Of a stretch of 64,000 nt of DNA, positions 1 through 41,390 are shown in pieces. Within the stretch, counting starts at the first letter, position 1. Every line of letters starts with the position of its first letter. The position numbers and the translations under genes were made by a program. The stretch spans positions 341,017 to 405,016 of IMG/VR virus record IMGVR_UViG_3300027899_000001. One strand, 5' to 3'. The notes below the pieces were generated by a model. The model saw nothing but the letters and a program-made list of their open reading frames with translations. It was not told the DNA's origin and did no database searches.

Positions 1-896
1 TTGGGGTCAATTCCCATACTTTGATAATGTTTAATAACTTTTTCTGCAAAATGAAATGGATTTCCACTATCATGTCTTACACCATCAAAAAGCTTTGAGA
101 ATTTTTTTCCAAATGATTTAAAGAATGATTCTGTTGTAAATGTATCTGTAAGAGCAATTCCAAGATCACCTTGATAAACATTTGACCAGTTTTCAAGAGC
201 TAAAAAATTTGCTTGTTTAAATCCATATTTTGCAGCATGAAACATAAACCATTCATGTGCATGAGTTCCTATTGGAGTAAGATTAAACATATGAGCAAAG
301 TGTACATTAGAAGTTCCATTAAAATTATCTCTCATACTAAATGCTAAATCTTCTACAACTTCTTTTTGATTTTCATATGAATATCTTCTACGAGTTCCAA
401 ATTCAGAAATCTTAACTCCATGATTATTAAATAATGCAGCTTTTTTTAGATTATTTTGTTCTCTTTCTACTCTTGAATTTATTTTTTCTCCCGTCATTTT
501 AAAATACAATTCAGATATAAGAGCAAGAAGTGGAACTTCCCAAAGAATTGTACGATACCAGTAGCCTTCTACAGTTACTTGAAGTTCACTTCCATTTTGT
601 ATAACTCCAACTTCTGAAGGATTATATCTATATCCTGCCAAAAAATCAAAATACGCAGGATCGATATATTTACATTTAGTTTCAAAGAAGTGTTTTTCTG
701 CAGTCAAAAGTTTAAGAGAAGACATATGAGAAATTTGTAATCTTAGTTCTTCTGCAAATCCTTCTGGAAAATTTACTTTTGAACGAACTATTAATGCATA
801 TTTAACTTTTGCTCTTGGAAAAAGTTTTAACACTGCATTCATCATACTAAATTTATAAAGATCGTTATCGAGTATTGATGTAATTATAGGTTCCAT
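1..896 (-). CDS. pncB: Nicotinate phosphoribosyltransferase (runs off left edge of window)
   Basis: Manual translation from ATG at 896: MEPIITSILDNDLYKFSM...SEFGTRRRYS...GTSNVHFA...PIGTHAHEW...ALTDTF...DGVRHDSGNP, all NAPRTase motifs. Absent from ORF track because the stop is outside the window. Confidence 0.95.
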   Translation of the reverse strand, partial: MEPIITSILDNDLYKFSMMNAVLKLFPRAKVKYALIVRSKVNFPEGFAEELRLQISHMSSLKLLTAEKHFFETKCKYIDPAYFDFLAGYRYNPSEVGVIQNGSELQVTVEGYWYRTILWEVPLLALISELYFKMTGEKINSRVEREQNNLKKAALFNNHGVKISEFGTRRRYSYENQKEVVEDLAFSMRDNFNGTSNVHFAHMFNLTPIGTHAHEWFMFHAAKYGFKQANFLALENWSNVYQGDLGIALTDTFTTESFFKSFGKKFSKLFDGVRHDSGNPFHFAEKVIKHYQSMGIDP

Positions 897-897
897 T

Positions 898-1365
898 TTA
901 TATTTTTTTAGCATGAAAATAAGTGACTCCATCAATTTCTGTCATATCAAGAATTTTAAATTGATATGCACTAAATAATGCTGTTACAATTCTTGGTGTT
1001 AACGATCTATCAATTTTATTATCTAATAAATTAAATATAACATCTATAAGCTTTCCATATAATATATGAGTTTTTAAACTCAACATAGGTTTACTTGCTA
1101 TAAATTTTCCATATACATAAGTATTCTTTTTTAAAAGATTATTAAAATCTTTAATAGTATCGTCTAAATATTTAATTTCATTTAATTTTTTAAGATGAAC
1201 AAGCGTTTTAATTCCTTTTAGTTCATCTTTATCATAGAAATAAAAATGTTTTCCCGAAAGAAATAAAACTTTTTCATCTTTAACTTTTTTATGTTTTTGC
1301 ACATATGCATGCATAACATGATCATATGTTTCATCTTTATATTGAATATCATTAAAACTTTTCAT
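898..1365 (-). CDS. Hypothetical protein
   Basis: 155-aa ORF tightly packed in the operon. Confidence 0.7.
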   Translation of the reverse strand: MKSFNDIQYKDETYDHVMHAYVQKHKKVKDEKVLFLSGKHFYFYDKDELKGIKTLVHLKKLNEIKYLDDTIKDFNNLLKKNTYVYGKFIASKPMLSLKTHILYGKLIDVIFNLLDNKIDRSLTPRIVTALFSAYQFKILDMTEIDGVTYFHAKKI

Positions 1366-1367
1366 TA

Positions 1368-1733
1368 TTATCTTATTCTAAATGTATCAAAAAATGTTCT
1401 AAACGATAGTCTTTTTTTCAAAATTATTGTTTCAGATACGTATTGAGTATCATTTTCATAATATTTTGTTCCTTTAGGAATTATGAATTTAAATACAGTT
1501 AAGTAAGAATGAGCATCATCTGCCGCAATTTTAAAACTTTTATATGAATGATAGCCTATGTTAATAGAAACTTGATCATAATAAAAAGTAGCATCAAATT
1601 CTACTTTTTTATTTAAAAGATTTTTAGTATATTGAAAATCTGTAAACCAAGATATTCCTCTTCTAGTCATAGTTTTATAACAAACTATATCTTTTTTTGC
1701 TGTTTTAAGAACATTTTTTCCAGTAAAACACAT
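1368..1733 (-). CDS. Hypothetical phage protein
   Basis: 121-aa ORF; KKDIVCYK...GYHSY...FIIPKGTKYY pattern. Confidence 0.7.
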   Translation of the reverse strand: MCFTGKNVLKTAKKDIVCYKTMTRRGISWFTDFQYTKNLLNKKVEFDATFYYDQVSINIGYHSYKSFKIAADDAHSYLTVFKFIIPKGTKYYENDTQYVSETIILKKRLSFRTFFDTFRIR

Positions 1734-1744
1734 ATTTTTAATTT

Positions 1745-2649
1745 TTAAAAGATTAGACTTCCTTCATCATCCCAACGACAATATAATTTACTATTTTCTC
1801 TTAAGATAACATATTTAAGAGATTCGTTATTGCCTTTAGACATACAATCATCATCAATAACAACTGACATTCCATTTATAGAATAAACTTTTGCACCAAA
1901 CGGAAGAGTATAAAGAAATTCACCATTTCCCGCCTTTTTAGGAAACATTCTCTCAGTTCCTATATATGCATTTTCTCCTGTAATATATTTCTTAATAGCA
2001 CTTATAGTTTCGTCTTTACATGCATTTTCTTTAACCCATTCACCTTCGTCATTTATAATAAATCCATCTTTATCTAACTCATAATATATTTTTCTAAAAG
2101 TAACTTGATTTGCACCAAGAAATTTACATCTAGCTATAATTTCTTTTGGAGTATGATTATCATATTCTTTTAACATATTAAGACTTAAACGAATATTAAA
2201 TCCTCGTGATTTAAGTAAAGAAATTAATTCTGATAAGTTAAATTTTAATTTTTTAGAAACTCCAATTATATTTAAATTATTTTCATCAGAAAAAATATCA
2301 GCAACAGAAAGACTTATCGTATTTACTTGAAGTTTTTGTAATAATCAATATTATCATCATCTAATAATACTCCAGTAGTTTGTAACTCAACATTAGGAAA
2401 TGGATAATTTAAATCTTTAAATAAAACAGATAAAACTTTTAAGAAATTTGTATTTTGCAAAGCTTCTCCTGTTCCTGTAAGAATACAAGTATTTACTCCA
2501 TTCATTACAGCATACTTAATACGTTTTTCTATTTGAATATACATAAAAGTATCTTCATATGGAGAATCATGCATTCTACTTACACAAAATGGACATTTAT
2601 TTACACAACTTTTTGTAGGAACTACGATAGAAATTGTCTAAATGTTCAT
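1745..2649 (-). pseudogene. Radical SAM protein interrupted by TAG at codon 4 and a -1 frame break near 2332-2345
   Basis: ATG AAC ATT TAG ACA ATT... continues in frame to CVNKCPFC (CxxxCxxC), ILTGTGEAL and ELQTTG. The -1 frame then continues QKLQVNTISLS... into the listed 1745..2176 ORF. Confidence 0.8.
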
Positions 2650-2715
2650 ATATTAATTATTATTGTGTAAATATAATACTAATTTCTGAATTAAAAAAAT
2701 ATTTTGCTATTTATT

Positions 2716-3366
2716 TTAAATATTTCCTATAAAAGAAAGTGTAAGAGAATCTACATAATAAACTTTAGCTTGTGTAAAAGCTTCTATAGTTTCTGACAAA
2801 TCTGAATTTATTGATTTACACGCATCTTCAATAACATATGTATTAAAACCTTCCATTGCTGCATCTATTGCAGTTTCTTTCACACAATAATCTAGAGCTA
2901 AACCACATACGTAAACTTCAACTACATTTCTTTCATTAAGAAAATCTTGAAGTTTTTTAGGAGCATCTGGATTTATTATTTTTGATCTATCAAATGCACT
3001 ATAAACATGATTATTCCTTTCCATGCCTTTTTTAAAGATATAAAAATCTTTTTTGCATTTTGATAAATTCAGATCTGGATGAAATGAAGCACCTAATGTA
3101 TCTGCTACACAATGATCAGGCCAAAGAATATCTTTTTCTCCATTTTCTCTTACGTAACTATCGTAAACAGAAGCTCCGGGATGTTGTGAGGCGAAAGCAT
3201 CCATTTCTGGATCATGCCAATCTTGTGTAAATATAACTAAATCAAATCTTTCAAGGAGATCATTAACTACGGGTACAATTTTGTCTCCATCTGGTACTGC
3301 TAGTGATCCTCCAGGGCAAAAATCTCTTTGCAAATCGATCACTATTAATGCTTTTTTCTTTATCAT
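2716..3366 (-). CDS. pncA: Nicotinamidase/pyrazinamidase (isochorismatase family)
   Basis: IDLQRDFCPGGSLAV, TQDWH, WPDHCV, KG...YSAF, GLALDYCV motifs. Confidence 0.95.
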   Translation of the reverse strand: MIKKKALIVIDLQRDFCPGGSLAVPDGDKIVPVVNDLLERFDLVIFTQDWHDPEMDAFASQHPGASVYDSYVRENGEKDILWPDHCVADTLGASFHPDLNLSKCKKDFYIFKKGMERNNHVYSAFDRSKIINPDAPKKLQDFLNERNVVEVYVCGLALDYCVKETAIDAAMEGFNTYVIEDACKSINSDLSETIEAFTQAKVYYVDSLTLSFIGNI

Positions 3367-3367
3367 A

Positions 3368-3526
3368 TCATCTTATAGTTTGAATTTCATATTCATCATA
3401 TCCATCTCTTGATTCATCTGAATCTATACATACAATTTCTAATCCAAATGATTGTAAAGCGTCTGATATATTGTCTACAATTTCATCAGCTCTATCATCA
3501 TAATCTACTCTAAATTTTGATTTCAT
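3368..3526 (-). CDS. Small acidic hypothetical protein (52 aa)
   Basis: Manual translation MKSKFRVDYDDRADEIVDNISDAL...; fills the gap between nadE and pncA with overlapping stop/start. Confidence 0.6.
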   Translation of the reverse strand: MKSKFRVDYDDRADEIVDNISDALQSFGLEIVCIDSDESRDGYDEYEIQTIR

Positions 3527-4458
3527 AATTCTTCCTTTTTATTTTTAACATATCTATTGTATATACTATTTTCATTTTCTATTATATCGTGTCTATATAT
3601 ATTGACAGGATTATTTCTTTTGAATTGAGATTTTAAATGTCGTTGAATGACAGAGTGTTGACGCATTTTATTAATTTCATCCATATATACTGCATTAACA
3701 GTTGGTGAATGTTTTTCAATAAAGTCTAAATATTCTTTAAGTATTCTATCAACTTCTTTATAACCATCTCTAGAATTTCCTGTCCAGTCTGGCATTATTT
3801 GTCCAAGATCTCCAAGATTTGTAACTCCAAGGCCATCAGTTGCAAGTGCAGTTATCGTATTTATTATTGTACTTCCTGCTTCATAATTTCCAGCATATTC
3901 ATTCATAGTTAACCATTCTGCCATATCATATACTTCTGTTTTCCAAAGATTTTGTATCATACCATAATCACCTACATCACCATGAAGAGTCCAAAAACCA
4001 AGAAGAAATTCTGTATAATTATCAGTAGAAAGAACTATTCCACGATGATATGAAGCTAAATCATACAAATAAATCATACGCAGTCTTGCTTTAAGATTTC
4101 CATTACGTATACGACTTGATGAACCTTCAGGATTAGGCGCATGAAACAGCATATTAGATTCCATTTTGGAATACATAAAATTATATTCTTCTTCAACGCT
4201 ATGCTCTAAGAATTTTGTACAAAATACTTTTCCTGTTAATTTGGCTCTTTCTAATTCTTCTGGTTGATTTGAACTTACTGGCAAACTTCTTCCTATAAGT
4301 GGAATATTTAATTCATCACAAACTGGTCTAGCAAGTGCTGCGCAAAGACAACTATCTATTCCACCTGAAATCCCTATAATAAGAGACTTTATATTATTGT
4401 TTGTAATATACAGACTTAATTCTTTTCGAATATTCGATACTGCTATTTGATAATTCAT
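3523..4458 (-). CDS. nadE: NH3-dependent NAD+ synthetase
   Basis: GISGGIDS PP-loop, GNLKARLRM, TDNYTE...GFWTLHGD, LWKTEVY; no glutaminase domain. Confidence 0.93.
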   Translation of the reverse strand: MNYQIAVSNIRKELSLYITNNNIKSLIIGISGGIDSCLCAALARPVCDELNIPLIGRSLPVSSNQPEELERAKLTGKVFCTKFLEHSVEEEYNFMYSKMESNMLFHAPNPEGSSSRIRNGNLKARLRMIYLYDLASYHRGIVLSTDNYTEFLLGFWTLHGDVGDYGMIQNLWKTEVYDMAEWLTMNEYAGNYEAGSTIINTITALATDGLGVTNLGDLGQIMPDWTGNSRDGYKEVDRILKEYLDFIEKHSPTVNAVYMDEINKMRQHSVIQRHLKSQFKRNNPVNIYRHDIIENENSIYNRYVKNKKEEL

Positions 4459-4466
4459 ATTATTTT

Positions 4467-4700
4467 TTATTTACGTATTATCCAAAATAATAACCAAAGT
4501 ATAGTCGTGGGTATCCAAATTGCCCAAGTAAATATTGAAAATTTTTCACTATTTTTTGCCCAACATAAAAATGTTAAAATAGCAGAAGTAGCACTCATTA
4601 AAAATAATACACCTGGATAAATAGGGATAAAAAGATTTCCTACTATTAAAATTACAGTAGTAATTATTAAAGCCATTGTGAAATTTTCAAAAATTTTCAT
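4467..4700 (-). CDS. Small membrane protein
   Basis: Three hydrophobic segments. Confidence 0.6.
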   Translation of the reverse strand: MKIFENFTMALIITTVILIVGNLFIPIYPGVLFLMSATSAILTFLCWAKNSEKFSIFTWAIWIPTTILWLLFWIIRK

Positions 4701-4727
4701 ATTTATTTGTGTTTAATTATTAAAAAA

Positions 4728-5231
4728 TTATAAATCATTTTCTTTGTGTTTACACCAAGTTAGATATTCATCTTGATCTCTTATCCATTGTAATAATTCT
4801 GGATCAGTAACTTGTTCATGTTCTATTTTAGACCATAATTCGTTATCTCTTTCATTTTTATCATATTGATTAACGAAATATATTTTCTTAATTCCCGCTG
4901 CTATTATATTTTTCAAACATTCACTGCAAGGTTCAAGTATACAATAAAGTTCTGCTTCTTCAATAGCAATTCCATGTTTGGCTGCAAAATTAATAGCATT
5001 CATTTCAGCATGAACCTCATATTTTTTAGACCAATTATGATGGGCTTCTCTATCAGTTAGAAAATTATAATTAGGAAAATGATCACAACAATTTTCAAAT
5101 CCTTTAGGTGTCCCATTTATTCCCGTGGAAATAATTCTTCTATCATGAACAATAAGAGCTCCCACTTGTCTTGAGACACATTTAGATTCTTGTCCAAGTA
5201 AATATGCTGTTTTAAGAAAGAAATGTTTCAT
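4728..5231 (-). CDS. dCMP deaminase
   Basis: SKCVSRQVGA, HAEMNAI, EPCSEC zinc-binding motifs. Confidence 0.92.
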   Translation of the reverse strand: MKHFFLKTAYLLGQESKCVSRQVGALIVHDRRIISTGINGTPKGFENCCDHFPNYNFLTDREAHHNWSKKYEVHAEMNAINFAAKHGIAIEEAELYCILEPCSECLKNIIAAGIKKIYFVNQYDKNERDNELWSKIEHEQVTDPELLQWIRDQDEYLTWCKHKENDL

Positions 5232-5479
5232 TTGAATTCTGCTTCTAAATTTCTTAAATGTTCATTAGTATATTCGTATTCTATTTTATCTTCATAATCA
5301 TAAAGATATATTTTATCTTTACATACTTTTGTTATTTTACACTTAAAATTTTTCCAAGAATAACAATTATATAAATTATCTACAACTCCTGACCAATTAT
5401 ATTTTTTACCTTCAACTAGTTGAAAACCATCATGAGTTACAAATATCTTTTTGGGTTTTTTCTTAAATGGATTTTTCAT
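5228..5479 (-). CDS. Hypothetical protein
   Basis: 83-aa ORF with ATGA-type overlaps on both sides. Confidence 0.6.
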   Translation of the reverse strand: MKNPFKKKPKKIFVTHDGFQLVEGKKYNWSGVVDNLYNCYSWKNFKCKITKVCKDKIYLYDYEDKIEYEYTNEHLRNLEAEFK

Positions 5480-5679
5480 GGTCTTAAGCTTTTTTGTTCA
5501 TTTTCTTCTCCATCGCCATCCATTAAAGTAGCAATCATGTTAATAGATTCAAGAATAGATTGTCTTAACATTTTAATCCAAGTTTCATAATCCTCTACTT
5601 TTGTGATATTAGGACGAATTGTTACGTTTTTTAGATTTTCACAAACAGTTTTAAGCACTTTCTTTTCTAACTTTTCCAT
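5476..5679 (-). CDS. Hypothetical protein
   Basis: 67-aa ORF, first gene after a promoter motif. Confidence 0.6.
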   Translation of the reverse strand: MEKLEKKVLKTVCENLKNVTIRPNITKVEDYETWIKMLRQSILESINMIATLMDGDGEENEQKSLRP

Positions 5680-5765
5680 ATTGTTATTTGTTTATTATAA
5701 TGCTAATATATAAAAAATATGAATACGATGTGATTTTTTGTTGTTAATTTTTTGTTAAAAAAGCA

Positions 5766-5789
5766 AAAGGGAGAATTTCTTCTCCCTTT
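5766..5789 (-). terminator. Intrinsic terminator after Ro60 gene
   Basis: aaagggaga-N6-tctcccttt hairpin followed by a U-rich tail on the minus strand. Confidence 0.75.
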
Positions 5790-5797
5790 CTATTCTA

Positions 5798-7501
5798 TTA
5801 GATTTCAATCTTGTTGATTTCATCTATGATTACCTGTGGGTTTATTTCAACCTGAGGAATCTTTTCGTAGATGTCTTGACCGTAGCCGTAAAGACGGAAT
5901 ACTCTGTTTCCACCCTTTATAGGAGCAGTTGCTGCATATCCGCATACGTTGATGATGTATACGTATGGTGTTCCGAACTTCTTGCAGTATCCTGCATAAG
6001 AATTTTCTACATTGCTGTATCCATCCTGTTCGTCAGAGATGATAAGAATTCTATCGTACTGCTTGTTAGTTCTTTCAAACAACTTGAAGCAAGAACCGAA
6101 ATCTGTACCGTGACCGCAACATCCGTTGTAGGACATGAACTTCTGCTTTAACGTATTGATTGAATCGATTGGGTTCCAACCTACAATCTGTTCAGCAGTA
6201 GAAGCGAAATGGTATACATCTCCACCAACACCCTTTGCAAATGTTGCAGCTACAAGTGCAGCCTTGTCAGCTGGCTTCTTATTGATAGCCTTCTTAGGGT
6301 CACCATTAAGATAAATGCTGGAGTATCCACCTTTCATAGAACCTGATGTATCGAATACAACTGCTGTTCTACCTTCTGGAAGCAAGTTCTGAAGGTTTGG
6401 AATTGACAATTCATATGCTGTTGAAAGTGCCTTTGCAACCTTAGCCAACTGTGTTCCGTTGAATTCAAGTGTCATCACTTCAAGAGCAATGTCAATCTGG
6501 TGTGGCCATACAAGAGACTTACGGATGAATTCCTTTTCAACAAGTAAATCGCACGCCTTGTCAAGAAGAACAGTATCATTGGTCTTAAGAATGTTACGTA
6601 CGTTACGAAGTAATGCAAGGTACCCAATCTTCTTAGTTTCAATAAGTTCCTTGTAGTTTTCAGTCTTAGCTTCATTAAGTTCAACAGTTGCCTGTTCCTT
6701 AGTGATAGTTCCAGCCTTAACCTTTTCAGCTACAACCTTTCCTGCTTCAGTATTCTTATCTTCAACAGTGTTGAACTGCTTAAGAACGCCAAGAACAAGA
6801 GCCTTAAGAGTTGGAAGACCAACATTACCATTTTCAGGTGCATCTAAAAGATATTCATCCTTTTCGAACTTAGTACCCTTAACAGCCTTCAAGTATTCAG
6901 CTTCTGATACAAATACTGTTCCATTTATAGGTGTTTCATGTGGGTGCACTAAGTTAACGATGTCAACAAGGCTTACACCACGTGACTTCATCTGGTACTT
7001 AGCTAACTGATATGCATCTGCATGTTCAATTGCATCCTTGAATCCCTTCTTAATAGCGTTTGGAATTGGTGCTTCTACACCATTCTTAGCCTGGTAACAT
7101 GCAAGAATTTCTGCCATGTCATCAAGACGATAAACGATACCTCCACGATTTTCCTTACGGTCTCTCTTAGAGAAGAATCTCTTAGCGATTTCAGAACCTG
7201 CAAGGTGAGGGATTAATTCTACTGCACCGTAATGAGTAACAGAACGCTGTCCAAATACTGTACGTGCATAGATAAGTGCCTTAGCTGCGAATAATGCATT
7301 CTTCTGCGCAACTCTATTGATAACTTCACGGAATCTCTTTTCACGTTCAGTTTCCTTTTCGTAATAAGTATTATCTAAACCAGTAGATAAAATACCAATT
7401 AATTCATGTTCTGGCTTCTGTGTTAAACCAGTTCCACCCTGTAAAGTTACAGTTTCCTTAACTTCTGGGTTGCTTACTCTCTTTTCATTGTACTTTGACA
7501 T
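5798..7501 (-). CDS. rsr: Ro60-related TROVE + vWA RNA-binding protein
   Basis: TROVE features (YARTVFGQRSV, YQLAKY, LVDIVNLVHP, GYLALLRNVRNI) and vWA MIDAS DTSGSM, GTD, IISDEQ. Confidence 0.92.
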   Translation of the reverse strand: MSKYNEKRVSNPEVKETVTLQGGTGLTQKPEHELIGILSTGLDNTYYEKETEREKRFREVINRVAQKNALFAAKALIYARTVFGQRSVTHYGAVELIPHLAGSEIAKRFFSKRDRKENRGGIVYRLDDMAEILACYQAKNGVEAPIPNAIKKGFKDAIEHADAYQLAKYQMKSRGVSLVDIVNLVHPHETPINGTVFVSEAEYLKAVKGTKFEKDEYLLDAPENGNVGLPTLKALVLGVLKQFNTVEDKNTEAGKVVAEKVKAGTITKEQATVELNEAKTENYKELIETKKIGYLALLRNVRNILKTNDTVLLDKACDLLVEKEFIRKSLVWPHQIDIALEVMTLEFNGTQLAKVAKALSTAYELSIPNLQNLLPEGRTAVVFDTSGSMKGGYSSIYLNGDPKKAINKKPADKAALVAATFAKGVGGDVYHFASTAEQIVGWNPIDSINTLKQKFMSYNGCCGHGTDFGSCFKLFERTNKQYDRILIISDEQDGYSNVENSYAGYCKKFGTPYVYIINVCGYAATAPIKGGNRVFRLYGYGQDIYEKIPQVEINPQVIIDEINKIEI

Positions 7502-7545
7502 AGTGTACCTCCTTTTTTTACTATTAGTTTATACTAAAGAATTAA

Positions 7546-7776
7546 TTAACATATTACTATAAAATGTTTTCTGTTTTCATTATCTTCACACTTAACAGGC
7601 ATGAATCTTTTATCTTCATAATCTTCTCTTGCAACTTGCATCCAACCATTTTCGGTTCCTGCTGGATTGTCTCTATTTGCTACCTCAAGTATTTCTTCAT
7701 CAGTAGCGTCCCATTCTGCGCAAACTTGCATATAACATATGCCTATCATCGGCTGTGAAACTATTACTCTTTCCAT
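7546..7776 (-). CDS. Hypothetical protein, co-transcribed upstream of Ro60
   Basis: 76-aa ORF with MQVC...NPAGTENGW...C...H...C pattern. Confidence 0.7.
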   Translation of the reverse strand: MERVIVSQPMIGICYMQVCAEWDATDEEILEVANRDNPAGTENGWMQVAREDYEDKRFMPVKCEDNENRKHFIVIC

Positions 7777-7795
7777 ATTAAATTTTATTAAAAAT

Positions 7796-7834
7796 AAAAA
7801 AGCCTGAGTAATTTTTTACGATTTCTCAGGCTTT
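7796..7834 (-). terminator. Intrinsic terminator in the leader of the Ro60 operon
   Basis: AAAGCCUGAG...CUCAGGCUUU 10-bp stem followed by UUUAUUUUU on the minus strand. Confidence 0.8.
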
Positions 7835-7878
7835 GCAATATAATCATAAAGTTCAAGTTATGAGCTATGCAAATAAAA

Positions 7879-7955
7879 GTTGAGAAATCTGAGAAGAGTT
7901 TAAATTGAAAATTCTAATAAAGATCGTTCGATGTAACTCTTTCTCTTACTACAAT
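7879..7955 (-). ncRNA. Y-RNA-like element, copy 1 (Ro60 operon leader)
   Basis: UUGUAGUAA-GAGAAAGAGU-UACAUCG...ACUCUUCUC-AGA-UUUCUCAA; ends pair; conserved with three other copies. Confidence 0.65.
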
Positions 7956-8098
7956 CAATTATATTATTATATATAAAGTCAAAAACTCTTTGTTTTTAGA
8001 CTTAGTGTTAAAATTTTGTTAAAGATTTATTTATTAAAATTATAGTGTAAATATAATAAAAATTCTTGACAGAAAAAACTTTTTATGTTAAAATTTTG

Positions 8099-8692: not shown

Positions 8693-8883
8693 AGTGTAAA
8701 TATAATAAAAAATTCTGAATTGAAAATATTTATGTGTTAAAATTTTGTTAAAATGATGAAACTAAACTTTATAGTTAATATATAAATTATATAACCTTGT
8801 ACTTGGGGGTTTAGTGTTTGAAAGAACATTCGAGTTGGAGAAATACCAACGAATAAATTCTCAAATATAAAATAACATAAGGA

Positions 8884-10522: not shown

Positions 10523-10599
10523 TGGTTGTCCCGGCAAGGCTCGAACTTGAAGTCTTCAGAATCAAAATCTGACGTGTTAACCGATTACACCACGGGACA
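10523..10599 (-). tRNA. tRNA-Gln(UUG), CCA encoded
   Basis: Cloverleaf UGUCCCG/CGGGACA, anticodon arm UCAGA-UUUUGAU-UCUGA, T loop UUCGAGC. Confidence 0.9.
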
Positions 10600-11241
10600 A
10601 TTTATAAAATCTAATAATTTTTCTATTGTAAAATATTTCAATTCATAATATGGTATTCTATATATTCTCCATCCTTTAGATCTTAAAAAATTATCTTTTT
10701 TCATATCATGTTCAACCCTTTTTAATCCGTTAGTAAAATGAGGTTCTCCATCATATTCAATAGCAATTTTTTGATCAACAAAAGCAAAATCTATAAAATA
10801 AGGATAAATTGGATATTCATTTATAATTGAATATTTTTCATAAAAACTATTATCTTTAAGCATTTTATTTATTATGCTTTCTCCTTTACTCATCAATCTT
10901 TTATGTCTATTTGTAAAAGTTGAAATATTATTTTCATCAGATAAATAGTCAAAACGTTTTTGTCTTAAAATTTCTTTAGATTGTTCGTTATGATGTTTAT
11001 CCTTGAATGCGTTAGTTATGTTTCCTTCTTTATAATTTTGTTTTAATGTGTTTGATTGTTGTAAAATAGACGCATTATTATGTTTTGTTTTTCCTTTTGC
11101 CCAGTGTATTTTTTCACCAGTTTTCAATGTTTTTCCCGTATCATGTGCTTTACCTTCTTCTGTATGAGTCCTCCAAATATGGCCTTTAATTCCATATTTA
11201 TTATATTCTTTTTCGCAATAAGGACATTTCATACAATACAT
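10585..11241 (-). CDS. Free-standing endonuclease (C2H2 finger + DUF559/Vsr-like domain)
   Basis: CPYC...HIWRTH; YFIDFAF...IAIEYDGEPH...D..L...GWRIYRI. Confidence 0.85.
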   Translation of the reverse strand: MYCMKCPYCEKEYNKYGIKGHIWRTHTEEGKAHDTGKTLKTGEKIHWAKGKTKHNNASILQQSNTLKQNYKEGNITNAFKDKHHNEQSKEILRQKRFDYLSDENNISTFTNRHKRLMSKGESIINKMLKDNSFYEKYSIINEYPIYPYFIDFAFVDQKIAIEYDGEPHFTNGLKRVEHDMKKDNFLRSKGWRIYRIPYYELKYFTIEKLLDFINCPVV

Positions 11242-11247
11242 TTAATT

Positions 11248-11325
11248 TGGTAGCGGGGAAGGGAATCGAACCCCTGTAGTACGGGTTATGAGCCCGAGCT
11301 GGAACCGTCTCCAGTCCACCCCGCG
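11248..11325 (-). tRNA. tRNA-Met(CAU), initiator type, CCA encoded
   Basis: C1:A72 mismatch, GGG/CCC anticodon stem, loop CUCAUAA. Confidence 0.92.
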
Positions 11326-11331
11326 ATATTT

Positions 11332-11538
11332 CTAAAAAGTTTTAATGTCTAGAGGATTGCTTAAATCAAGATGATCCTCTTTAACAATATAAGTTCTTCC
11401 AATCGATTTTTGTGAAAAATAACTCTCAAGTAATTCTCCTAATCTAAGATTTGTGTATTGATTTGGATTACTTTCTTTAGATAAAAGAATTTTCACTGCA
11501 TCTGATCTGTGAATTTCAAAAAAAGTATTTTCTGACAT
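11332..11538 (-). CDS. Hypothetical protein
   Basis: 68-aa ORF after a TATATAA promoter; ends in TAG just before tRNA-Met. Confidence 0.6.
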   Translation of the reverse strand: MSENTFFEIHRSDAVKILLSKESNPNQYTNLRLGELLESYFSQKSIGRTYIVKEDHLDLSNPLDIKTF

Positions 11539-11587
11539 ATTTTTAAGTATTTATATTTTATATATCAAAAATTCTAAAAGTTTTGAG

Positions 11588-11875
11588 TTAATTATAGGTA
11601 ACATTTATCGATTTCATAACCAATTTAGCAAGTTTTTTAGGCTTTTGTTTAGGATAACGTAAATACCATTGCGCACCATTTCTTCCATGAAATGAACCAT
11701 AAATTCCATAAAACATTACTTCTTTTATATAACGATTCATTGAATTATAGGTATAATCGCCGATAACTTTAGTTAAAGGAAATATTTTTCCTTTACGTTT
11801 TTCTGATTTCCAAATCTTAAGAATTTTCTTAATTTTTGTTTTTACTTGCTCCTGTGTATATGTTTTATGTCTCAT
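11588..11875 (-). CDS. Hypothetical basic protein
   Basis: 95-aa ORF. Confidence 0.6.
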   Translation of the reverse strand: MRHKTYTQEQVKTKIKKILKIWKSEKRKGKIFPLTKVIGDYTYNSMNRYIKEVMFYGIYGSFHGRNGAQWYLRYPKQKPKKLAKLVMKSINVTYN

Positions 11876-11885
11876 GATTTTATAA

Positions 11886-12293
11886 TTATTTTCTATCGCC
11901 TTTTAATTTCTGATCTATATCTAAAGGATTTCCAGTATCATGTTGCATACCTTTACCTTGATAAATTGAAAATTCTGCATCTTCACATTGACTAACATAA
12001 CTCATCCAATATCCCCAGTCTGAATATGCATCTGTTTCCCATATTTCAATATCTCCTGCATGAACAGTATAAGTTGTATGCATTCCAATTCCAAGTGTAC
12101 GTTCACCAAGAAAGTCTTCTACTCTATAGTCATAAACATCTACAATTATAGCTCCTGGAAAATCATTGTAAATAGTAATTGTACCTGTATGATTTTCTTC
12201 ACATGGTTCTTTATCTCCACAAGAAAAAATTCCAATAATAGCAATCATAAATAATGATGCTATAAATAATTTAAAAAAGTTTGATCGTTTCAT
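11886..12293 (-). CDS. Putative lipoprotein
   Basis: Signal peptide with lipobox IFSC followed by acidic residues. Confidence 0.7.
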   Translation of the reverse strand: MKRSNFFKLFIASLFMIAIIGIFSCGDKEPCEENHTGTITIYNDFPGAIIVDVYDYRVEDFLGERTLGIGMHTTYTVHAGDIEIWETDAYSDWGYWMSYVSQCEDAEFSIYQGKGMQHDTGNPLDIDQKLKGDRK

Positions 12294-12312
12294 TTGTTAT
12301 CATATTTAATTA

Positions 12313-12813
12313 TTAATAATTTTTGAATAAAGGAATTCCTAATGTTAATTCACCTGTCCATACTCCAGTATATTCATTCCATCCATATCCTATTCCTGCT
12401 TTAAAATATACTCTATTACCGTTATATTTTGAACCTACCATAACTATAGTTACTGGCTCTGTTCCTCCATAACCATAACTATCTTCATATTGATAACCAT
12501 CAGATGCTACACCCACTGATAAATAAAAAGTATAAATATCAGTTGGAGGTCCACTATATAAAGAAGCAGCAAATCCAAAAGAATTTATATTTTCTCCAGT
12601 CATAGGCATTGTAGTTGGCATCCAACCTCCTGTTAGTCCAAATAATCCTGATTGAAAGTCTGCGCCAACCACTCCATCAAGCCAAGAATATCCTCCGTGA
12701 ATACTTAAAGCATATGGTGTATGAGTTGTTAAATCATTTGTTTGTTGCGCATTTAATGTTGATGAAATGAATACAGACATCATCAAGCAAAAAACAAAAA
12801 GAAATTTTTTCAT
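12313..12813 (-). CDS. Putative outer-membrane beta-barrel protein
   Basis: Cleavable signal peptide (..LNA/QQ), alternating Gly/aromatic beta strands, C-terminal LTLGIPLF. Confidence 0.65.
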   Translation of the reverse strand: MKKFLFVFCLMMSVFISSTLNAQQTNDLTTHTPYALSIHGGYSWLDGVVGADFQSGLFGLTGGWMPTTMPMTGENINSFGFAASLYSGPPTDIYTFYLSVGVASDGYQYEDSYGYGGTEPVTIVMVGSKYNGNRVYFKAGIGYGWNEYTGVWTGELTLGIPLFKNY

Positions 12814-12910
12814 GTGTATAAATGTTTAGTTAATAAAAAATTTATATTTATATATATGTTAAAAGTTTTATATTTTGATGTAAACAAAATGATATTTGAT
12901 GTAAAATTTG

Positions 12911-12983
12911 TCCCTCTAGAGAGATTCGAACTCTCGACACGCGGGATTAGAAGCCGCTGGTCTGACCACTGACCTATAGAGGG
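12911..12983 (-). tRNA. tRNA with anticodon CUA (amber suppressor)
   Basis: 73-nt canonical cloverleaf CCCUCUA UA GGUC AGUGGUCA GACC A GCGGC UUCUAAU CCCGC GUGUC GAGAG UUCGAAU CUCUC UAGAGGG A; standard numbering puts CUA at 34-36; C31:C39 mismatch. Confidence 0.8.
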
Positions 12984-13011
12984 TAAAAGAGGGCATTTAA
13001 CCCTCATTGTT

Positions 13012-13338
13012 TTATTCTTTTTTTGTATGAAATTCTATACATTTATTTATTGCGTTTGGATATTGATTAAGAGGGTGATTTTCTTCAGGGTAATGATTTT
13101 CAATCTGTGAGAATTTTTTTCCTCTCATTAATCCATATGCTGCATATTTAATTCTTAATTCTAATCCGCCTACGTAAGATTTCCATGCGGCGTCTTTAGG
13201 TTCTATAATTCTTTCACCTTTTAAATGAACAGTCTTTCTTTGATTTTTCATAGCTCTTTGTAATGCTGCGCTTTGTTTAATATCTTTTTTTAAAGATTCG
13301 ATTGCGACTTTATCGATTGTTTTTTCTATTGTTTCCAT
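13012..13338 (-). CDS. Hypothetical protein in amber module
   Basis: 108 aa, YAAYGLMRGKKFSQIE segment; lies between the amber leader peptide and the CUA tRNA. Confidence 0.8.
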   Translation of the reverse strand: METIEKTIDKVAIESLKKDIKQSAALQRAMKNQRKTVHLKGERIIEPKDAAWKSYVGGLELRIKYAAYGLMRGKKFSQIENHYPEENHPLNQYPNAINKCIEFHTKKE

Positions 13339-13417
13339 AATGATTATTTTATTTTAGTTATTAAATTAATTGATCAAGGACATAATGTCTTTGAGATTGT
13401 CTTCGATAACCTAATCA

Positions 13418-13444
13418 TTAGGGAGATCTAATCTAGTGTGTCAT
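13418..13444 (-). promoter_or_regulatory. Putative leader peptide M-T-H-(TAG)-I-R-S-P-stop
   Basis: ATG ACA CAC TAG ATT AGA TCT CCC TAA TGA with A-rich start context (ttaaaactATG). Confidence 0.55.
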
Positions 13445-13507
13445 AGTTTTAAGTTTTAATTTAGTTTAAATCTAATAAAAATTTTTGATATAATTTTATT
13501 GTATATA

Positions 13508-13858
13508 TTAAAGTTTTGTTAATGTTTCTTCTTTTAAAGCTAATGGTAAATTGGATGTTAATTTATGAGATCTTTCTCCAGGTTCAATAGCGATCGCAGT
13601 TAATTGATTTCCAATATCTGGTTCAAGAAACGTTGTATACTTTAAATCGTAAAATTTAATTTTTTCTAAAAGGTGTTTAAGTTGTTGTTCATTTTCAACA
13701 GATAAGAATATCAAATACTTAGAATTAGTATTCCATTCCTTTGCGATTTCTGGATGTTCATGTTGAAATTCAATTGCAGCATGTGCGGCTTGAACTGCCT
13801 GATAACCCGGAGTTAAATCTCTACGGGTAATAACAATTAATTTGTGTATCTATTTCAT
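13508..13858 (-). CDS. pth2: Peptidyl-tRNA hydrolase type 2-like protein with in-frame TAG at codon 3
   Basis: MK*IHKLIVITRRDLTPGYQAVQAAHAAIEF...W...LIFLSVENEQQL...FLEPDIGNQLTAIAIEP...SNLPLA; the ORF track caught only the last 68 aa. Confidence 0.8.
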
Positions 13859-13859
13859 T

Positions 13860-13937
13860 TTATTTACTATTTTTTTTATAACTTACATAAAGTATAAGTA
13901 ATACTACTATTGATATAATTATGATAATTGTTCCCAT
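13860..13937 (-). CDS. 25-aa single-pass membrane peptide
   Basis: MGTIIIIISIVVLLILYVSYKKNSK; stop 1 nt before the pth2 ATG. Confidence 0.45.
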   Translation of the reverse strand: MGTIIIIISIVVLLILYVSYKKNSK

Positions 13938-13951
13938 ATTTTATTATATAT

Positions 13952-14065
13952 TTAAATTGAAAAAAGTTTCATAATTAATATAACTAACATAATTCCTATC
14001 ATACTCCAAAAAACTACTTTATAGGAATAAGATTTGTCTCTATTGTAATAATCTTCACTTTTCAT
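13952..14065 (-). CDS. 37-aa membrane peptide
   Basis: MKSEDYYNRDKSYSYKVVFWSMIGIMLVILIMKLFSI; ATGA overlap with upstream gene. Confidence 0.5.
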   Translation of the reverse strand: MKSEDYYNRDKSYSYKVVFWSMIGIMLVILIMKLFSI

Positions 14066-14379
14066 TTGTATTCTTCTCCAGATATATCTACTAGTGCTTT
14101 AGGAATAAAAATTTCATCTTGTCCTTCATACCATTCATTTGGCCAATTATCAATATCTAATATTGGTCTTTTAAATGCTTTTTTAATTTCTTTTCTAACC
14201 CATTTTAAATCTTTAATAGAAGTATGTTCAACCATTAAACTCTTATCTGAATAACTTGTTGGAACATCGTTTTTATCATAATAAACTTCTGATATGGAAA
14301 AATATCTTTCTTTTCCTTTTGCATATCTTCCAGTTATTACTCTAAAATTCCAATGATGTTGAGGTTTATATTTTTTCAT
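14062..14379 (-). CDS. Hypothetical phage protein
   Basis: WNFRV...FSISEVYYD...KAFKRPIL pattern. Confidence 0.7.
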   Translation of the reverse strand: MKKYKPQHHWNFRVITGRYAKGKERYFSISEVYYDKNDVPTSYSDKSLMVEHTSIKDLKWVRKEIKKAFKRPILDIDNWPNEWYEGQDEIFIPKALVDISGEEYK

Positions 14380-14402
14380 GATGTTGAGGTTTATATTTTT
14401 TC
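14353..14402. repeat. 25-bp perfect tandem duplication
   Basis: atgatgttgaggtttatattttttc x2, spanning the start of the 14062..14379 gene. Confidence 0.9.
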
Positions 14403-14403
14403 A

Positions 14404-14851: not shown

Positions 14852-14884
14852 AATTTTATTTTATTAAATGAATACTAAAAATTG

Positions 14885-34437: not shown

Positions 34438-35034
34438 TTACTGTTTTTTATATAAAATATTAAATTTTTCTAATGCCATTTTAATTCTCTTATCATGTTC
34501 AAACGCCCATTCATATTTATCAATATCTTCAACCGGAATCCAATGCACCATATCTACTTCTTCACTGATAAATTGTTCAATATCTCTTGGAAGTAATTTT
34601 TGTGCAAGCGTAAAATCAAAAGCTAAACAATAATTTAATGCTATATTTTGACGGCATTCTTTAGATTCTGTTTCAACATAAAAAGGTTCTTTATTATTTG
34701 TAAATGCAAGATATTTTGAATAATCTTCAATAAGAAATGAGGTTTCTTCATATAGCTCTCTTCGTACTGCATCCCAGCCATTTTCATTCCAGTCTATGTA
34801 TCCTCCTGGAGCTACCCATTTTCCAGGTTCGTCTCTTATTATTTCAGATCTTTTTTCTCCAAGAACATGCACGCCATCACTAAATTCACCAAATACTATC
34901 GCTACTACTGCAACTGAACGAGATTCCCAAACTTCTCTTTTCTTAAAGAATTTTGAAAGTATCCAATAAATCCATTTTGGAAAAATAAAAACAAAATGGC
35001 AAGAGTTTAATTTATTAGTAAATATCGGTATCAT
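34438..35034 (-). CDS. Nudix hydrolase
   Basis: PGGYIDWNENGWDAVRRELYEETS Nudix box; WAFEH. Confidence 0.9.
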   Translation of the reverse strand: MIPIFTNKLNSCHFVFIFPKWIYWILSKFFKKREVWESRSVAVVAIVFGEFSDGVHVLGEKRSEIIRDEPGKWVAPGGYIDWNENGWDAVRRELYEETSFLIEDYSKYLAFTNNKEPFYVETESKECRQNIALNYCLAFDFTLAQKLLPRDIEQFISEEVDMVHWIPVEDIDKYEWAFEHDKRIKMALEKFNILYKKQ

Positions 35035-40514: not shown

Positions 40515-40975
40515 TGAAAAATATTATATTACTTTGAAAAGAAAAAGAGAAAAAGATAATAAACAAATTCCTAATAAAGTTAGATAACCTATTCGTATAG
40601 GTCTTTTGAAATCTGCCCACTCTTTTGATAACTTTTTCATTACAATATAATAGCTTATGCCTACTATTGTTAAGAGTACTACTAAATTTAGTAATTGAGG
40701 CAAAATGCTTCTTAAAAAGTCCATAATTTTAATTATTAAAGTTAGCGAATTTTACGAATAAGAATGTGTTTAGAAAGAACCATATATACGTTACAAGATT
40801 CAGTGATGTTGTAAACATGAAGTTCATTTTTAACTTTATCAATTCCTTTAATTTGTACAAGGTCATTAGCGTGAGTAATATAAACTCCGTCTTTTTTCAA
40901 TTCGTCTACTGGAAGAGATGGGTCTTTAAGTATTGGTTTCATATTGTAAATATTAAATTAAAACTTCAAATTATT

Positions 40976-41059
40976 TGCTCCAATATATAGATTCGAACTA
41001 TAAGCCTTTTCAGGTTCCTGGCCTCTATTTGGGCTCTCATCCAAATGAGTAAAGGAGTA
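40976..41059 (-). ncRNA. Degenerate tRNA-like element
   Basis: D arm CUCA-UUUGGA-UGAG, T arm UAUAG-UUCGAAU-CUAUA, partial acceptor stem, no canonical anticodon loop; has an upstream promoter motif. Confidence 0.5.
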
Positions 41060-41390
41060 TATTTTTAATTTTAAAGAACTGTTGTATTAATTATAGTGTA
41101 AATATAATACAAATATTTGATACAAAAAAATATTTTTCCATTTATTTTAACAAAATCTTAATTATTTTTCTACAGCCATTAAAAGTTCAAGATCTTTAAA
41201 AACTGCTTCTACTATTTTTATTTTATCTTTATAAGCTGAAATATGAGCATCCATTACAGTTGTTAAATAATCTGCGCCTGTTTGTTTTTTAAGTTTTTCT
41301 ATTTCAGCAATAGCATTTTCATATACAGTTATTAAACTTGTATATTTCTCAATGATTCTTTCGTACTCTTCTTTTTGTGTCATGATATTT

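What the first reader, a model, noticed from the sequence alone, without database searches (positions are those of the whole stretch)
1..4458. Phage-encoded deamidating NAD+ salvage route (PncA, PncB, NadE)
Seen: pncA, pncB and nadE are clustered. Established: the described phage NAD reconstitution pathways NARP1 (Adps, Namat) and NARP2 (Nampt, Nmnat) rebuild NAD+ destroyed by SIR2/TIR defences without deamidation. Inference: this Preiss-Handler-type set could be a different route from nicotinamide back to NAD+. The adenylyltransferase step (NadD/NadM/NadR) is not in the window and may be off the left edge or supplied by the host.
Basis: partly seen in the sequence, partly recalled or inferred. 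Interest (0 to 1): 0.6.

Follow-up and report, generated by a model that had tools for sequence, protein, structure and literature searches.

The report
Jumbo phage NAD+ salvage genes, nadD missing
A 405-kb freshwater jumbo phage carries intact genes for three of the four textbook steps that turn nicotinamide back into NAD+ (PncA, PncB, NadE) but has no recognisable gene for the middle adenylyl-transfer step, so it is a new, incomplete example of the NAD+-making gene clusters already catalogued in jumbo phages.

Summary
On the minus strand lie pncB (window 1-935, running 279 nt past the left edge; 404 aa), pncA (2716-3366) and nadE (3523-4458). All three have intact catalytic motifs and strong family or structure matches. 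The window is the last 64 kb of a complete 405,016-bp phage genome with terminal repeats. The same trio recurs in several other viral contig lineages, so the clustering is not chance.

The missing adenylyltransferase is not off the left edge. No NadD, NadM or NadR is detectable anywhere in the genome. The closest relative has a true nadD in a syntenic slot that is about 450 bp and empty here. The only candidate is a divergent, phage-specific HxGH nucleotidyltransferase domain 170 kb away, of undetermined substrate.

Most likely the phage runs the Nam->NA->NaMN and NaAD->NAD+ steps itself and uses host NadD in between. The purpose would be to hold up NAD+ for its own NAD+-dependent ligase and perhaps against NADase defences.

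Preiss-Handler clusters in jumbo phages, and the counter-defence idea, were already published in silico (Li et al. 2024). Nothing has been tested experimentally. Verdict: a new member of a known kind, of moderate to low interest.

The parts
1..935 (-). pncB, nicotinate phosphoribosyltransferase (404 aa). The gene continues 279 nt beyond the left window edge (genome 340737-341951).
   Evidence: TIGR01514 427 bits and NF003704 470 bits, both above cut-off. PF17767 and PF04095 both match. PDB 2im5 E=6e-109, with GTHAHEW aligned to GTHPHEW. The full ORF is seen.
898..1365 (-). ORF155, unknown function. Conserved next to pncB in the closest relative G002.
   Evidence: No Pfam, NCBIfam or PHROG family. 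Homolog in L004. Atlas relatives are Bacteroidota hypotheticals with a loose class I methyltransferase-like fold. No HxGH motif.
1368..1733 (-). ORF121, unknown function (phrog_13450). Conserved in G002.
1745..2344 (-). Radical SAM gene, C-terminal segment (includes ORF143).
   Evidence: tblastn with the intact 313-aa homolog L006:8455-9396 (PF04055 38.8 bits) gives 54% identity over residues 120-313 in frame -1.
2333..2337 (.). T5/A5 homopolymer where the radical SAM reading frame shifts.
   Evidence: The two homologous segments meet here in different frames. A second assembly of the run covers w1-2694 with 0 differences and 0 gaps.
2323..2649 (-). Radical SAM gene, N-terminal segment with the CxxxCxxC motif (CVNKCPFC). 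It has an in-frame TAG at codon 4 (w2638-2640).
   Evidence: 61% identity to L006 residues 6-97 in frame -2. The sequence is read. There is a weak PF04055 hit for ORF83.
2665..2698 (-). 34-nt promoter-like repeat between pncA and the radical SAM gene.
   Evidence: It recurs with 0-5 mismatches at w8694, w20145 and genome 336565, 325645 and 323293, all in the same orientation. Contig breaks in the second assembly fall here. Promoter function is inferred.
2716..3366 (-). pncA, nicotinamidase (216 aa).
   Evidence: PF00857 92 bits. NF008623 157 bits, under its 174-bit cut-off. The top PDB hits are nicotinamidases, 2wt9 E=1e-44. D11/K113/C161 and D49/H51/H85 are present.
3368..3526 (-). ORF52, small acidic protein of unknown function between nadE and pncA.
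   Evidence: No family hit. Present in the identical contig L003.
3523..4458 (-). nadE, single-domain (NH3-dependent type) NAD+ synthetase (311 aa).
   Evidence: PF02540 122 bits. TIGR00552 110 bits, above its 63.7-bit cut-off. AF2 pLDDT 85.6. Foldseek gives 1xng and 3fiu at TM 0.82 by target over about 290 columns. SGGIDS at 31-36. More than 6,000 homologs of about 290 aa.
4467..4700 (-). ORF77, small hydrophobic (membrane) protein directly upstream of nadE.
   Evidence: Sequence. No family.
4728..5231 (-). dCMP/cytidine deaminase. A neighbour that is also adjacent to the NAD genes in L004 and L006.
   Evidence: PF00383 79 bits. Synteny.
34438..35034 (-). NUDIX hydrolase of unresolved subfamily. 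It may be linked to ADP-ribose or NAD metabolism.
   Evidence: PF00293 52.5 bits. Only weak NCBIfam hits to RppH, NrtR and NadM-Nudix.
40943..41390 (.). Syntenic slot where the closest relative G002 carries nadD. It is empty here.
   Evidence: G002 nadD (6010-6492; TIGR00482 122 bits, above its 112-bit cut-off) lies between genes that map to w40742-40942 and w41391-42152. There is no nadD remnant by tblastn.

Best explanation
This is an auxiliary NAD+ salvage module of a jumbo phage whose host is probably a Bacteroidota bacterium.

The phage makes three canonical enzymes:
- PncA deamidates nicotinamide to nicotinate.
- PncB condenses nicotinate with PRPP, using ATP, to give nicotinate mononucleotide (NaMN).
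- NadE amidates nicotinate adenine dinucleotide (NaAD) to NAD+, using ATP and ammonia.

The intermediate step, NaMN + ATP -> NaAD, is not encoded in recognisable form. The host's NadD, which is essential and near-universal in bacteria, most likely performs it. PRPP is also host-supplied.

The net effect is to pull nicotinamide and nicotinate into NAD+ faster during infection. That would sustain the phage's own NAD+-dependent DNA ligase and buffer the pool when NAD+ is cleaved to nicotinamide.

Shown here: the gene identities, their intact motifs, the absence of nadD, the recurrence of the cluster, and the presence of a phage NAD+-dependent ligase. Inferred: enzyme activity, use of host NadD, and the physiological purpose.
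For: - Enzyme identities and catalytic motifs.
- Complete phage genome.
- The trio recurs in several viral lineages.
- No CTP_transf_like/NadD/NadM/NadR in the genome. The Pfam search rang in 14 of 14 control genomes. A profile built from relatives' NadD proteins found nothing either, nor did tblastn.
- Relatives carry a true NadD or NadR near pncB. The syntenic nadD slot is empty here.
- A second near-complete jumbo phage, G019 (96% complete), has PncB and NadE but no NadD.
- The phage encodes an NAD+-dependent ligase N-terminal module, TIGR00575 196 bits.
- The closest cellular PncB relatives are almost all Bacteroidota.
Against: - There are no expression or activity data. The only public run that holds the sequence is DNA, from the probable source sample.
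- PncA scores below the NCBIfam equivalog cut-off.
- An incomplete pathway could mean a module in decay. The radical SAM gene inside the cluster carries a frameshift and an in-frame TAG. pncB in the closest relative has an in-frame TAA.
- The host is unknown, so its NadD and its PRPP supply are assumed from general knowledge.
- A divergent phage HxGH nucleotidyltransferase exists and could make the host unnecessary.
Confidence: 0.6

Rival explanations
1. Dedicated counter-defence. The module was selected mainly to rebuild NAD+ from the nicotinamide released by SIR2, TIR or SEFIR NADase defences. It would be a deamidating analogue of NARP2.
For: PncA makes nicotinamide, the product of NADase defences, the entry substrate. 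Phages are shown to counter such defences with NARP1, NARP2 and NARP3. Li et al. propose the same role for jumbo-phage NAD+ synthesis.
Against: Nothing here links the cluster to defence. Its neighbours are housekeeping or auxiliary genes: a dCMP deaminase, a Ro60/TROVE protein, tRNAs and a homing endonuclease. The route costs more ATP and more steps than NARP2, and it depends on a host enzyme and on host PRPP. The phage has its own NAD+ consumer, a ligase, which explains a supply role without invoking defence. The idea is untested in the literature I could search.
Confidence: 0.3
2. Phage-autonomous pathway. The N-terminal 205 residues of the 634-aa protein at genome 167659-169563(-) form a phage-specific HxGH nucleotidyltransferase, and this domain performs the NaMN (or NMN) adenylyl transfer. 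No host enzyme would be needed.
For: Both signature motifs are intact: GSFKPMHIGH at residues 24-33 and ISGTILR at 169-175. They are conserved in a family of mostly standalone proteins of about 210 aa. The AF2 model has pLDDT 90. Foldseek hits include archaeal NMNAT and bacterial NadD at E of about 5e-6. One source names a homolog NMN adenylyltransferase. It is the only motif-intact candidate in the genome.
Against: Phosphopantetheine adenylyltransferases match equally well or better. All NCBIfam scores are far below cut-off. The gene lies about 170 kb from the NAD cluster, in the replication module next to gp32, in this phage and in a relative. It was not found in five pncB-carrying relatives.
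Confidence: 0.15
3. Francisella-type order of steps. The phage NadE amidates NaMN directly to NMN, acting as an NMN synthetase. An NMN-specific adenylyltransferase, from the host or the phage, then makes NAD+ and bypasses NadD.
For: The top sequence hit among solved structures is 3fiu, which the fold library titles 'NMN synthetase from Francisella tularensis'. It ties for best fold match at TM 0.82 by target. Several pncB-carrying relatives encode NadR-type, NMN-specific enzymes rather than NadD.
Against: The margin over ordinary NaAD-specific NadEs is negligible: 62 against 59 bits, and equal TM. The closest relatives with the same NadE clade carry a true NadD (G002 and L006), which fits the classical order. 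Specificity cannot be read from these data.
Confidence: 0.1
4. Decaying remnant. After nadD was lost, the module no longer contributes to NAD+ synthesis and is drifting.
For: nadD is absent. The radical SAM gene has two lesions. pncB has a nonsense codon in the closest relative.
Against: pncA, pncB and nadE are full length with every catalytic motif intact. A nadD-less PncB plus NadE set is also kept in an independent 429-kb phage.
Confidence: 0.1

Closest known systems
'NAD-jumbo phages' with Preiss-Handler gene clusters (Li et al. 2024, Microbiome, PMC11662467), e.g. Kuafu_71 pncB-nadD-nadE
   Same: A jumbo phage over 200 kb. Clustered pncB and nadE. Probable Bacteroidota host. It encodes NAD+-consuming enzymes such as an NAD+-dependent ligase. 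The same proposed roles apply: supply and counter-defence.
   Different: This cluster includes pncA, so it starts from nicotinamide. The genome lacks nadD, so it does not meet that paper's definition of a complete pathway. A radical SAM gene is embedded in the cluster. The sample is freshwater, not gut.
Bacterial four-step nicotinamide salvage (pyridine nucleotide cycle: PncA-PncB-NadD-NadE)
   Same: The same enzyme families and the same predicted chemistry for steps 1, 2 and 4. PncB is 54-61% identical to Bacteroidota enzymes.
   Different: The genes are encoded by a virus. Step 3 (NadD) is missing.
NARP2 (Nampt + Nmnat; e.g. the NadV/NatV type of phage KVP40)
   Same: It would start from nicotinamide and PRPP and end in NAD+.
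   Different: NARP2 is a non-deamidating two-step route through NMN. Neither Nampt nor Nmnat is present here. NARP2 has experimental support and this module has none.
NARP1 (Adps + Namat) and NARP3 (PnuC + NadR)
   Same: All are phage-encoded ways to raise NAD+.
   Different: They use different substrates (ADP-ribose for NARP1, nicotinamide riboside for NARP3) and different protein families. The genome has no PRPS-like gene, no PnuC and no NadR.
Francisella tularensis NadE/NadM route (NaMN -> NMN -> NAD+)
   Same: The phage NadE is as close to the F. tularensis NMN synthetase (3fiu) as to ordinary NadEs.
   Different: There is no evidence for NaMN specificity. No NadM is present.

Membership tests
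PncB (nicotinate phosphoribosyltransferase, TIGR01514 / PRK05321 type) | Full-length match above the curated equivalog or subfamily cut-offs, with the N-terminal and catalytic domains both present | tested here: met
   TIGR01514 427 bits (cut-off 269.6). NF003704 470 bits (cut-off 379). PF17767 and PF04095 both match.
PncB (nicotinate phosphoribosyltransferase, TIGR01514 / PRK05321 type) | Conserved active-site His motif (GTxxHEW), by comparison with a solved NAPRTase | tested here: met
   GTHAHEW aligns with GTHPHEW of 2im5. The role of this His as the phospho-acceptor is from my own knowledge.
PncA (nicotinamidase/pyrazinamidase) | Isochorismatase fold with the Asp-Lys-Cys triad and the Asp/His/His metal site | tested here: met
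   PF00857 92 bits. D11/K113/C161 and D49/H51/H85 align with the nicotinamidases 2wt9, 1ilw and 3pl1.
PncA (nicotinamidase/pyrazinamidase) | Score above the NCBIfam equivalog cut-off (NF008623) | tested here: not met
   157 bits against a cut-off of 174. It is still by far the best model, and every top solved relative is a nicotinamidase.
NadE (NH3-dependent NAD+ synthetase) | PP-loop ATP pyrophosphatase domain (SGGxDS) scoring above the nadE domain cut-off, with no glutaminase domain | tested here: met
   SGGIDS at 31-36. TIGR00552 110 bits (cut-off 63.7). PF02540 is the only domain in 311 aa.
NadE (NH3-dependent NAD+ synthetase) | Complete NadE fold, including the C-terminal half that sequence models do not cover | tested here: met
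   The AF2 model (pLDDT 85.6) aligns over about 290-300 columns with 1xng, 3fiu, 5wp0 and 1nsy, at TM up to 0.82 by target.
NadE (NH3-dependent NAD+ synthetase) | Substrate is NaAD rather than NaMN | not testable with these tools
   NaAD-specific and NaMN-specific solved enzymes match equally well.
Complete Preiss-Handler pathway / 'NAD-jumbo phage' sensu Li et al. 2024 | All steps encoded: PncB, NadD (or another NaMN adenylyltransferase) and NadE | tested here: not met
   PncB and NadE are present. No NadD, NadM or NadR is found in the complete genome. The controls rang in 14 of 14 genomes.
NARP1 | Adps (PRPP-synthetase-like) plus Namat | tested here: not met
   PF13793 has no match in the genome. 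PF04095 finds only PncB.
NARP2 | Nampt plus Nmnat | tested here: not met
   The only NAPRTase-family gene is PncB. There is no CTP_transf_like Nmnat.
NARP3 | PnuC transporter plus bifunctional NadR | tested here: not met
   PF04973 has no match. There is no NadR-type NMNAT.
NMN/NaMN adenylyltransferase (candidate: N-terminal domain of the 634-aa protein, genome 168949-169563) | HxGH and ISxTxxR motifs on a Rossmann-like nucleotidyltransferase fold | tested here: met
   Motifs. Fold.
NMN/NaMN adenylyltransferase (candidate: N-terminal domain of the 634-aa protein, genome 168949-169563) | Specific assignment to NadD, NadM or NadR rather than PPAT or another HxGH transferase | tested here: inconclusive
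   PPAT, archaeal NMNAT and NadD score alike. All NCBIfam scores are far under cut-off.

The most novel reading that the evidence does not exclude
The phage completes nicotinamide-to-NAD+ salvage without any canonical NadD, NadM or NadR. It would do so through the phage-specific HxGH nucleotidyltransferase family found here (the N-terminal domain of the 634-aa protein; mostly standalone proteins of about 210 aa in related phages), possibly combined with a NadE that accepts NaMN. That would be a self-contained deamidating NAD+ reconstitution pathway, a fourth NARP-like route, built around a previously unassigned adenylyltransferase family.
Probability: 0.12. Interest if true: 0.6.

Novelty: new member of a known kind. 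Interest (0 to 1): 0.35.

Why it matters
NAD+ is a central battleground between bacteria and phages, and three phage NAD+ reconstitution pathways have experimental support. A deamidating PncA-PncB-(NadD)-NadE route has been catalogued in jumbo phages but never tested.

This genome is complete, so it gives a clean case in which the phage keeps the flanking steps and drops the middle one. That shows these modules can be hybrid phage-host pathways. It also means that surveys which score only complete pathways undercount them. Finally, the case points to a testable candidate for a non-canonical adenylyltransferase.

None of this changes current understanding unless the enzymes are shown to act during infection.

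Tried and rejected
- **Phage GenBank records.** Megablast of window 1-8000 found no match.
- **Left edge.** The 15 kb left of the window holds no adenylyltransferase. It holds only unknown ORFs and a GIY-YIG/NUMOD homing endonuclease.
- **ORF274, downstream of pncB.** It hit the 634-aa protein, but only through a shared 27-residue module, not the nucleotidyltransferase domain.
- **The 616-aa ORF at genome 155040-156890.** It is homologous to a relative's protein that has a bona fide CTP_transf_like domain. Here the motif is degenerate (FEPFTVAQ in place of FQPFTLGH), so I dropped it as a candidate.
- **The 'NadM-like' gene of the 429-kb relative G019.** It is a CoaD/PPAT by NCBIfam.
- **Small ORFs in the cluster (155, 121, 52, 77 and 70 aa).** None has an HxGH motif or an informative family.
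- **Assembly error at the A5 run in the radical SAM gene.** A second assembly agrees. It comes from the same run, which is probably the source sample, so this is not independent proof.
- **TAG recoding by the phage tRNA(CUA).** TAG ends 32 of 355 long ORFs, and read-through extensions after TAG are no longer than after TAA or TGA. I named no alternative genetic code.
- **A Y RNA next to the Ro60/TROVE gene.** None was found at the gathering threshold or at E<=1.
- **Supplementary tables of Li et al. 2024.** They are not held, so I could not count how many of their phages carry pncA.

Full report
**What the window is.** The 64-kb window is the last part (341017-405016) of a single virus record of 405,016 bp. 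The record has direct terminal repeats and is rated 100% complete. I found an 80-bp exact terminal repeat and no N. The standard bacterial code gives 88% coding density. TAG, TGA and TAA all behave as stops. Phage character is supported by gp32, a collagen-repeat tail fibre with an endosialidase-chaperone domain, a GIY-YIG/NUMOD homing endonuclease and a 14-gene tRNA array. The only public run that holds the sequence is a freshwater metagenome, probably the source sample.

**The observation.** On the minus strand, in the direction of transcription, the genes run as follows:
- a Ro60/TROVE protein (5798-7501) and small ORFs
- a dCMP deaminase (4728-5231)
- ORF77, a small membrane protein (4467-4700)
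- nadE (3523-4458)
- ORF52 (3368-3526)
- pncA (2716-3366)
- a 34-nt promoter-like repeat (2665-2698)
- a split radical SAM gene (1745-2649)
- ORF121 (1368-1733) and ORF155 (898-1365)
- pncB (935 down to 279 nt beyond the window edge)
- ORF70

PncB passes two NCBIfam nicotinate phosphoribosyltransferase models over its full length. It matches the solved NAPRTase 2im5 at E=6e-109, with the GTHAHEW motif conserved.

PncA belongs to the isochorismatase family. Its best NCBIfam model is nicotinamidase, at 157 bits against a cut-off of 174. All of its top solved relatives are nicotinamidases. The Asp-Lys-Cys triad and the Asp/His/His metal site are present.

NadE passes the nadE domain model, but sequence models align only residues 1-187. 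I therefore folded it with 32 homologs, giving pLDDT 85.6. The whole chain superposes on NH3-dependent NAD+ synthetases. Its clade of about 290 aa has more than 6,000 relatives.

**Not chance.** A scan of viral contigs with PncB returned 20 loci. NadE, PncA and PncB lie together in L004, L006, L019 and the L014-L018/L022 group. PncB-NadD-NadE clusters occur in L009, L010 and L013. PncB lies near a NadR-type gene in L005, L006, L007 and L012 (NadR and NadD identities). Three NAD genes recurring together across PncB identities of 49-74% shows functional linkage.

**The missing step.** The CTP_transf_like family (NadD, NadM, the NadR N-domain) rang in all 14 control genomes but not in this phage at E<=1e-3. 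At E<=10 the only hit was 34 profile positions inside a 634-aa ORF 170 kb away. A profile built from the relatives' NadD proteins found nothing else, and neither did tblastn. The 15 kb left of the window has no such gene.

The closest relative, G002, is collinear with the window. It has a true NadD, TIGR00482 at 122 bits against a 112-bit cut-off. That nadD lies between genes that map to w40742-40942 and w41391-42152. Here the slot is about 450 bp and holds no remnant.

A second near-complete jumbo phage, G019 (429 kb, 96%), has PncB and NadE but no PncA and no NadD. Its CTP_transf_like hits are a CoaD/PPAT and a ligase-like protein. So keeping the flanking steps without nadD is not unique to this genome. 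PRPP synthetase and PnuC are also absent.

**The one candidate.** The 634-aa protein (genome 167659-169563, minus strand) starts with a domain of about 205 residues. This domain carries GSFKPMHIGH and ISGTILR, the two signature motifs of HxGH adenylyltransferases. It belongs to a conserved family of mostly standalone proteins of about 210 aa at 46-59% identity. Atlas neighbours are all viral.

The AF2 model has pLDDT 90. It matches phosphopantetheine adenylyltransferases, archaeal NMNAT and bacterial NadD about equally well (E of 4e-6 to 1e-4, TM 0.5-0.57 by query). Sequence hits are equally split.

Its context is the replication module beside gp32, both here and in a relative. It was not found in five pncB-carrying relatives. 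It could be the missing enzyme, but nothing assigns its substrate.

**How it most likely works.** Known chemistry of the families gives this route: PncA converts Nam to NA; PncB converts NA, PRPP and ATP to NaMN; host NadD converts NaMN and ATP to NaAD; phage NadE converts NaAD, ATP and NH3 to NAD+. NadD is essential in nearly all bacteria (my own knowledge), so relying on the host is feasible.

The phage has at least one NAD+ consumer, a short NAD+-dependent DNA ligase. It also has a NUDIX hydrolase of unresolved type in the window. The closest cellular PncB proteins, and the atlas relatives of ORF155, are overwhelmingly Bacteroidota. That points to a Bacteroidota host or donor.

The 34-nt repeat upstream of the radical SAM gene recurs at six sites in the same orientation. 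This suggests two transcription units, nadE-ORF52-pncA and rSAM-ORF121-ORF155-pncB. Promoter function is inferred.

**Rivals.**
- Dedicated counter-defence is plausible, because PncA makes the NADase product nicotinamide the entry point. Nothing here supports it directly.
- A phage-autonomous pathway through the HxGH domain remains open.
- A Francisella-type order, with NadE acting as an NMN synthetase, also remains open. 3fiu is the top sequence hit and ties for the best fold match, but the margins are negligible.
- Decay is suggested by lesions in neighbouring or orthologous genes. Against it, all three enzymes here are intact.

**Comparison with the literature.** NARP1 and NARP2 (bioRxiv 10.1101/2024.02.11.579819) and NARP3 (PMC13464706) do not mention PncA, PncB or NadE.

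Li et al. 2024 (PMC11662467) report that 174 of 668 gut jumbo phages encode complete salvage or Preiss-Handler pathways. [quoted passage not shown]

I found no experimental test of a deamidating phage route. The present case is therefore a new member of a known kind. Its particulars are that pncA is present, nadD is absent from a complete genome, a radical SAM gene is embedded in the cluster, and the sample is freshwater.

**The radical SAM gene.** ORF83 and ORF143 are two pieces of one gene. Its intact 313-aa homolog lies between pncA and pncB in L006 and passes PF04055. A homolog of the ORF143 part also lies just upstream of pncB in L011. Here the frame shifts at an A5 run (w2333-2337), and codon 4 is TAG. 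A second assembly of the run reproduces the region exactly. No defined radical SAM subfamily or solved relative was found. Its recurrent position inside NAD clusters is unexplained.

**Verdict.** The concept is not novel, and interest is moderate to low (0.35). The most novel reading still open is a non-canonical adenylyltransferase that completes a phage-autonomous deamidating route (probability about 0.12).

Noticed in passing
Whole genome. In the window: about 20794-21192, 21897-22289, 23081-23602, 44641-45210 and 45174-45611 (window = genome minus 341016). Also L001:12438-13262 and L001:12100-12441.: 66 copies of a near-invariant module of about 27 residues, (I/L)V(R/K)EHINEKFxEESDPIxD(M/L)GIG, occur in 47 ORFs. 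Most sit at residues 15-17 of the ORF. Some repeat every 115-130 residues within one ORF. Conservation is at the protein level (60% amino-acid identity, 67% nucleotide identity), not as recent DNA repeats. The related phage locus L034 has 3 copies. Function is unknown; it could be a leader, a targeting peptide or a paralog-family marker.
   Followed up: partly
window 1745-2649 (-): A radical SAM gene (CVNKCPFC motif) lies inside the NAD cluster. It is broken by an in-frame TAG at codon 4 and by a frameshift at an A5 run. An intact 313-aa homolog sits between pncA and pncB in L006, and another homolog sits next to pncB in L011. No subfamily could be assigned. Why a radical SAM enzyme travels with NAD salvage genes is unexplained.
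   Followed up: partly
window 10523-20112 (-), especially 12910-12983: An array of 14 tRNA genes includes one with a CUA anticodon, an amber suppressor that ARAGORN labels 'Pyl'. TAG nevertheless behaves as an ordinary stop genome-wide. The suppressor is not clearly derived from the phage's tRNA-Gln genes.
   Followed up: partly
window 5798-7501 (-): A Ro60/TROVE-domain protein (567 aa) lies just upstream of the NAD cluster. It is 77% identical in the closest relative. No Y RNA or other partner RNA was detected nearby with Rfam, even at E<=1.
   Followed up: partly
L024:3659-5563 (-), i.e. genome 167659-169563, outside the window: A 634-aa fusion protein. It has an N-terminal phage-specific HxGH nucleotidyltransferase domain, then the 27-residue module, then a C-terminal part with a Pol-beta-NTase-like GSx(n)DxD stretch. 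The next gene gives weak Pol-beta palm/NTP_transf_2 hits, and gp32 follows. In the related phage L034 the N-terminal domain is a separate gene.
   Followed up: partly
window 2665-2698, 8694-8727 and 20145-20178; genome 336565, 325645 and 323293: A 34-nt AT-rich element (minus strand TTTTTTAATTCAGAAATTAGTATTATATTTACAC) is repeated at six sites in one orientation. Those I checked lie upstream of minus-strand genes or a tRNA. It is probably a phage promoter and loosely resembles the Bacteroidota -33/-7 type.
   Followed up: partly
L004:10457-10459 (closest relative, G002): pncB of the closest relative is interrupted by an in-frame TAA where this phage has Leu. It is either a pseudogene or a sequencing error. 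Either way, the module varies between close relatives.
   Followed up: no
L037:1267-2418 (-), i.e. genome 129111-130262, outside the window: A short (383 aa) NAD+-dependent DNA ligase that covers only the N-terminal 378 of the 652 LigA model positions. The next ORF has a zinc-ribbon-like hit. The ligase may be split or minimal.
   Followed up: no
L001:13943-14518 (+), just left of the window: A GIY-YIG/NUMOD3 homing endonuclease (SegE-like) lies on the opposite strand immediately downstream of pncB. It could be a driver of local gene gain and loss.
   Followed up: no
window 22295-23071, 24567-26126, 45674-49561, 50382-57254 and 58835-64000: Other notable genes: a papain-family cysteine protease, an SPFH/flotillin-like protein, a 1295-aa collagen-repeat tail fibre, and two giant ORFs (2290 aa and at least 1722 aa). 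The last 4 kb has raised GC (0.41) and a strong AT skew.
   Followed up: no
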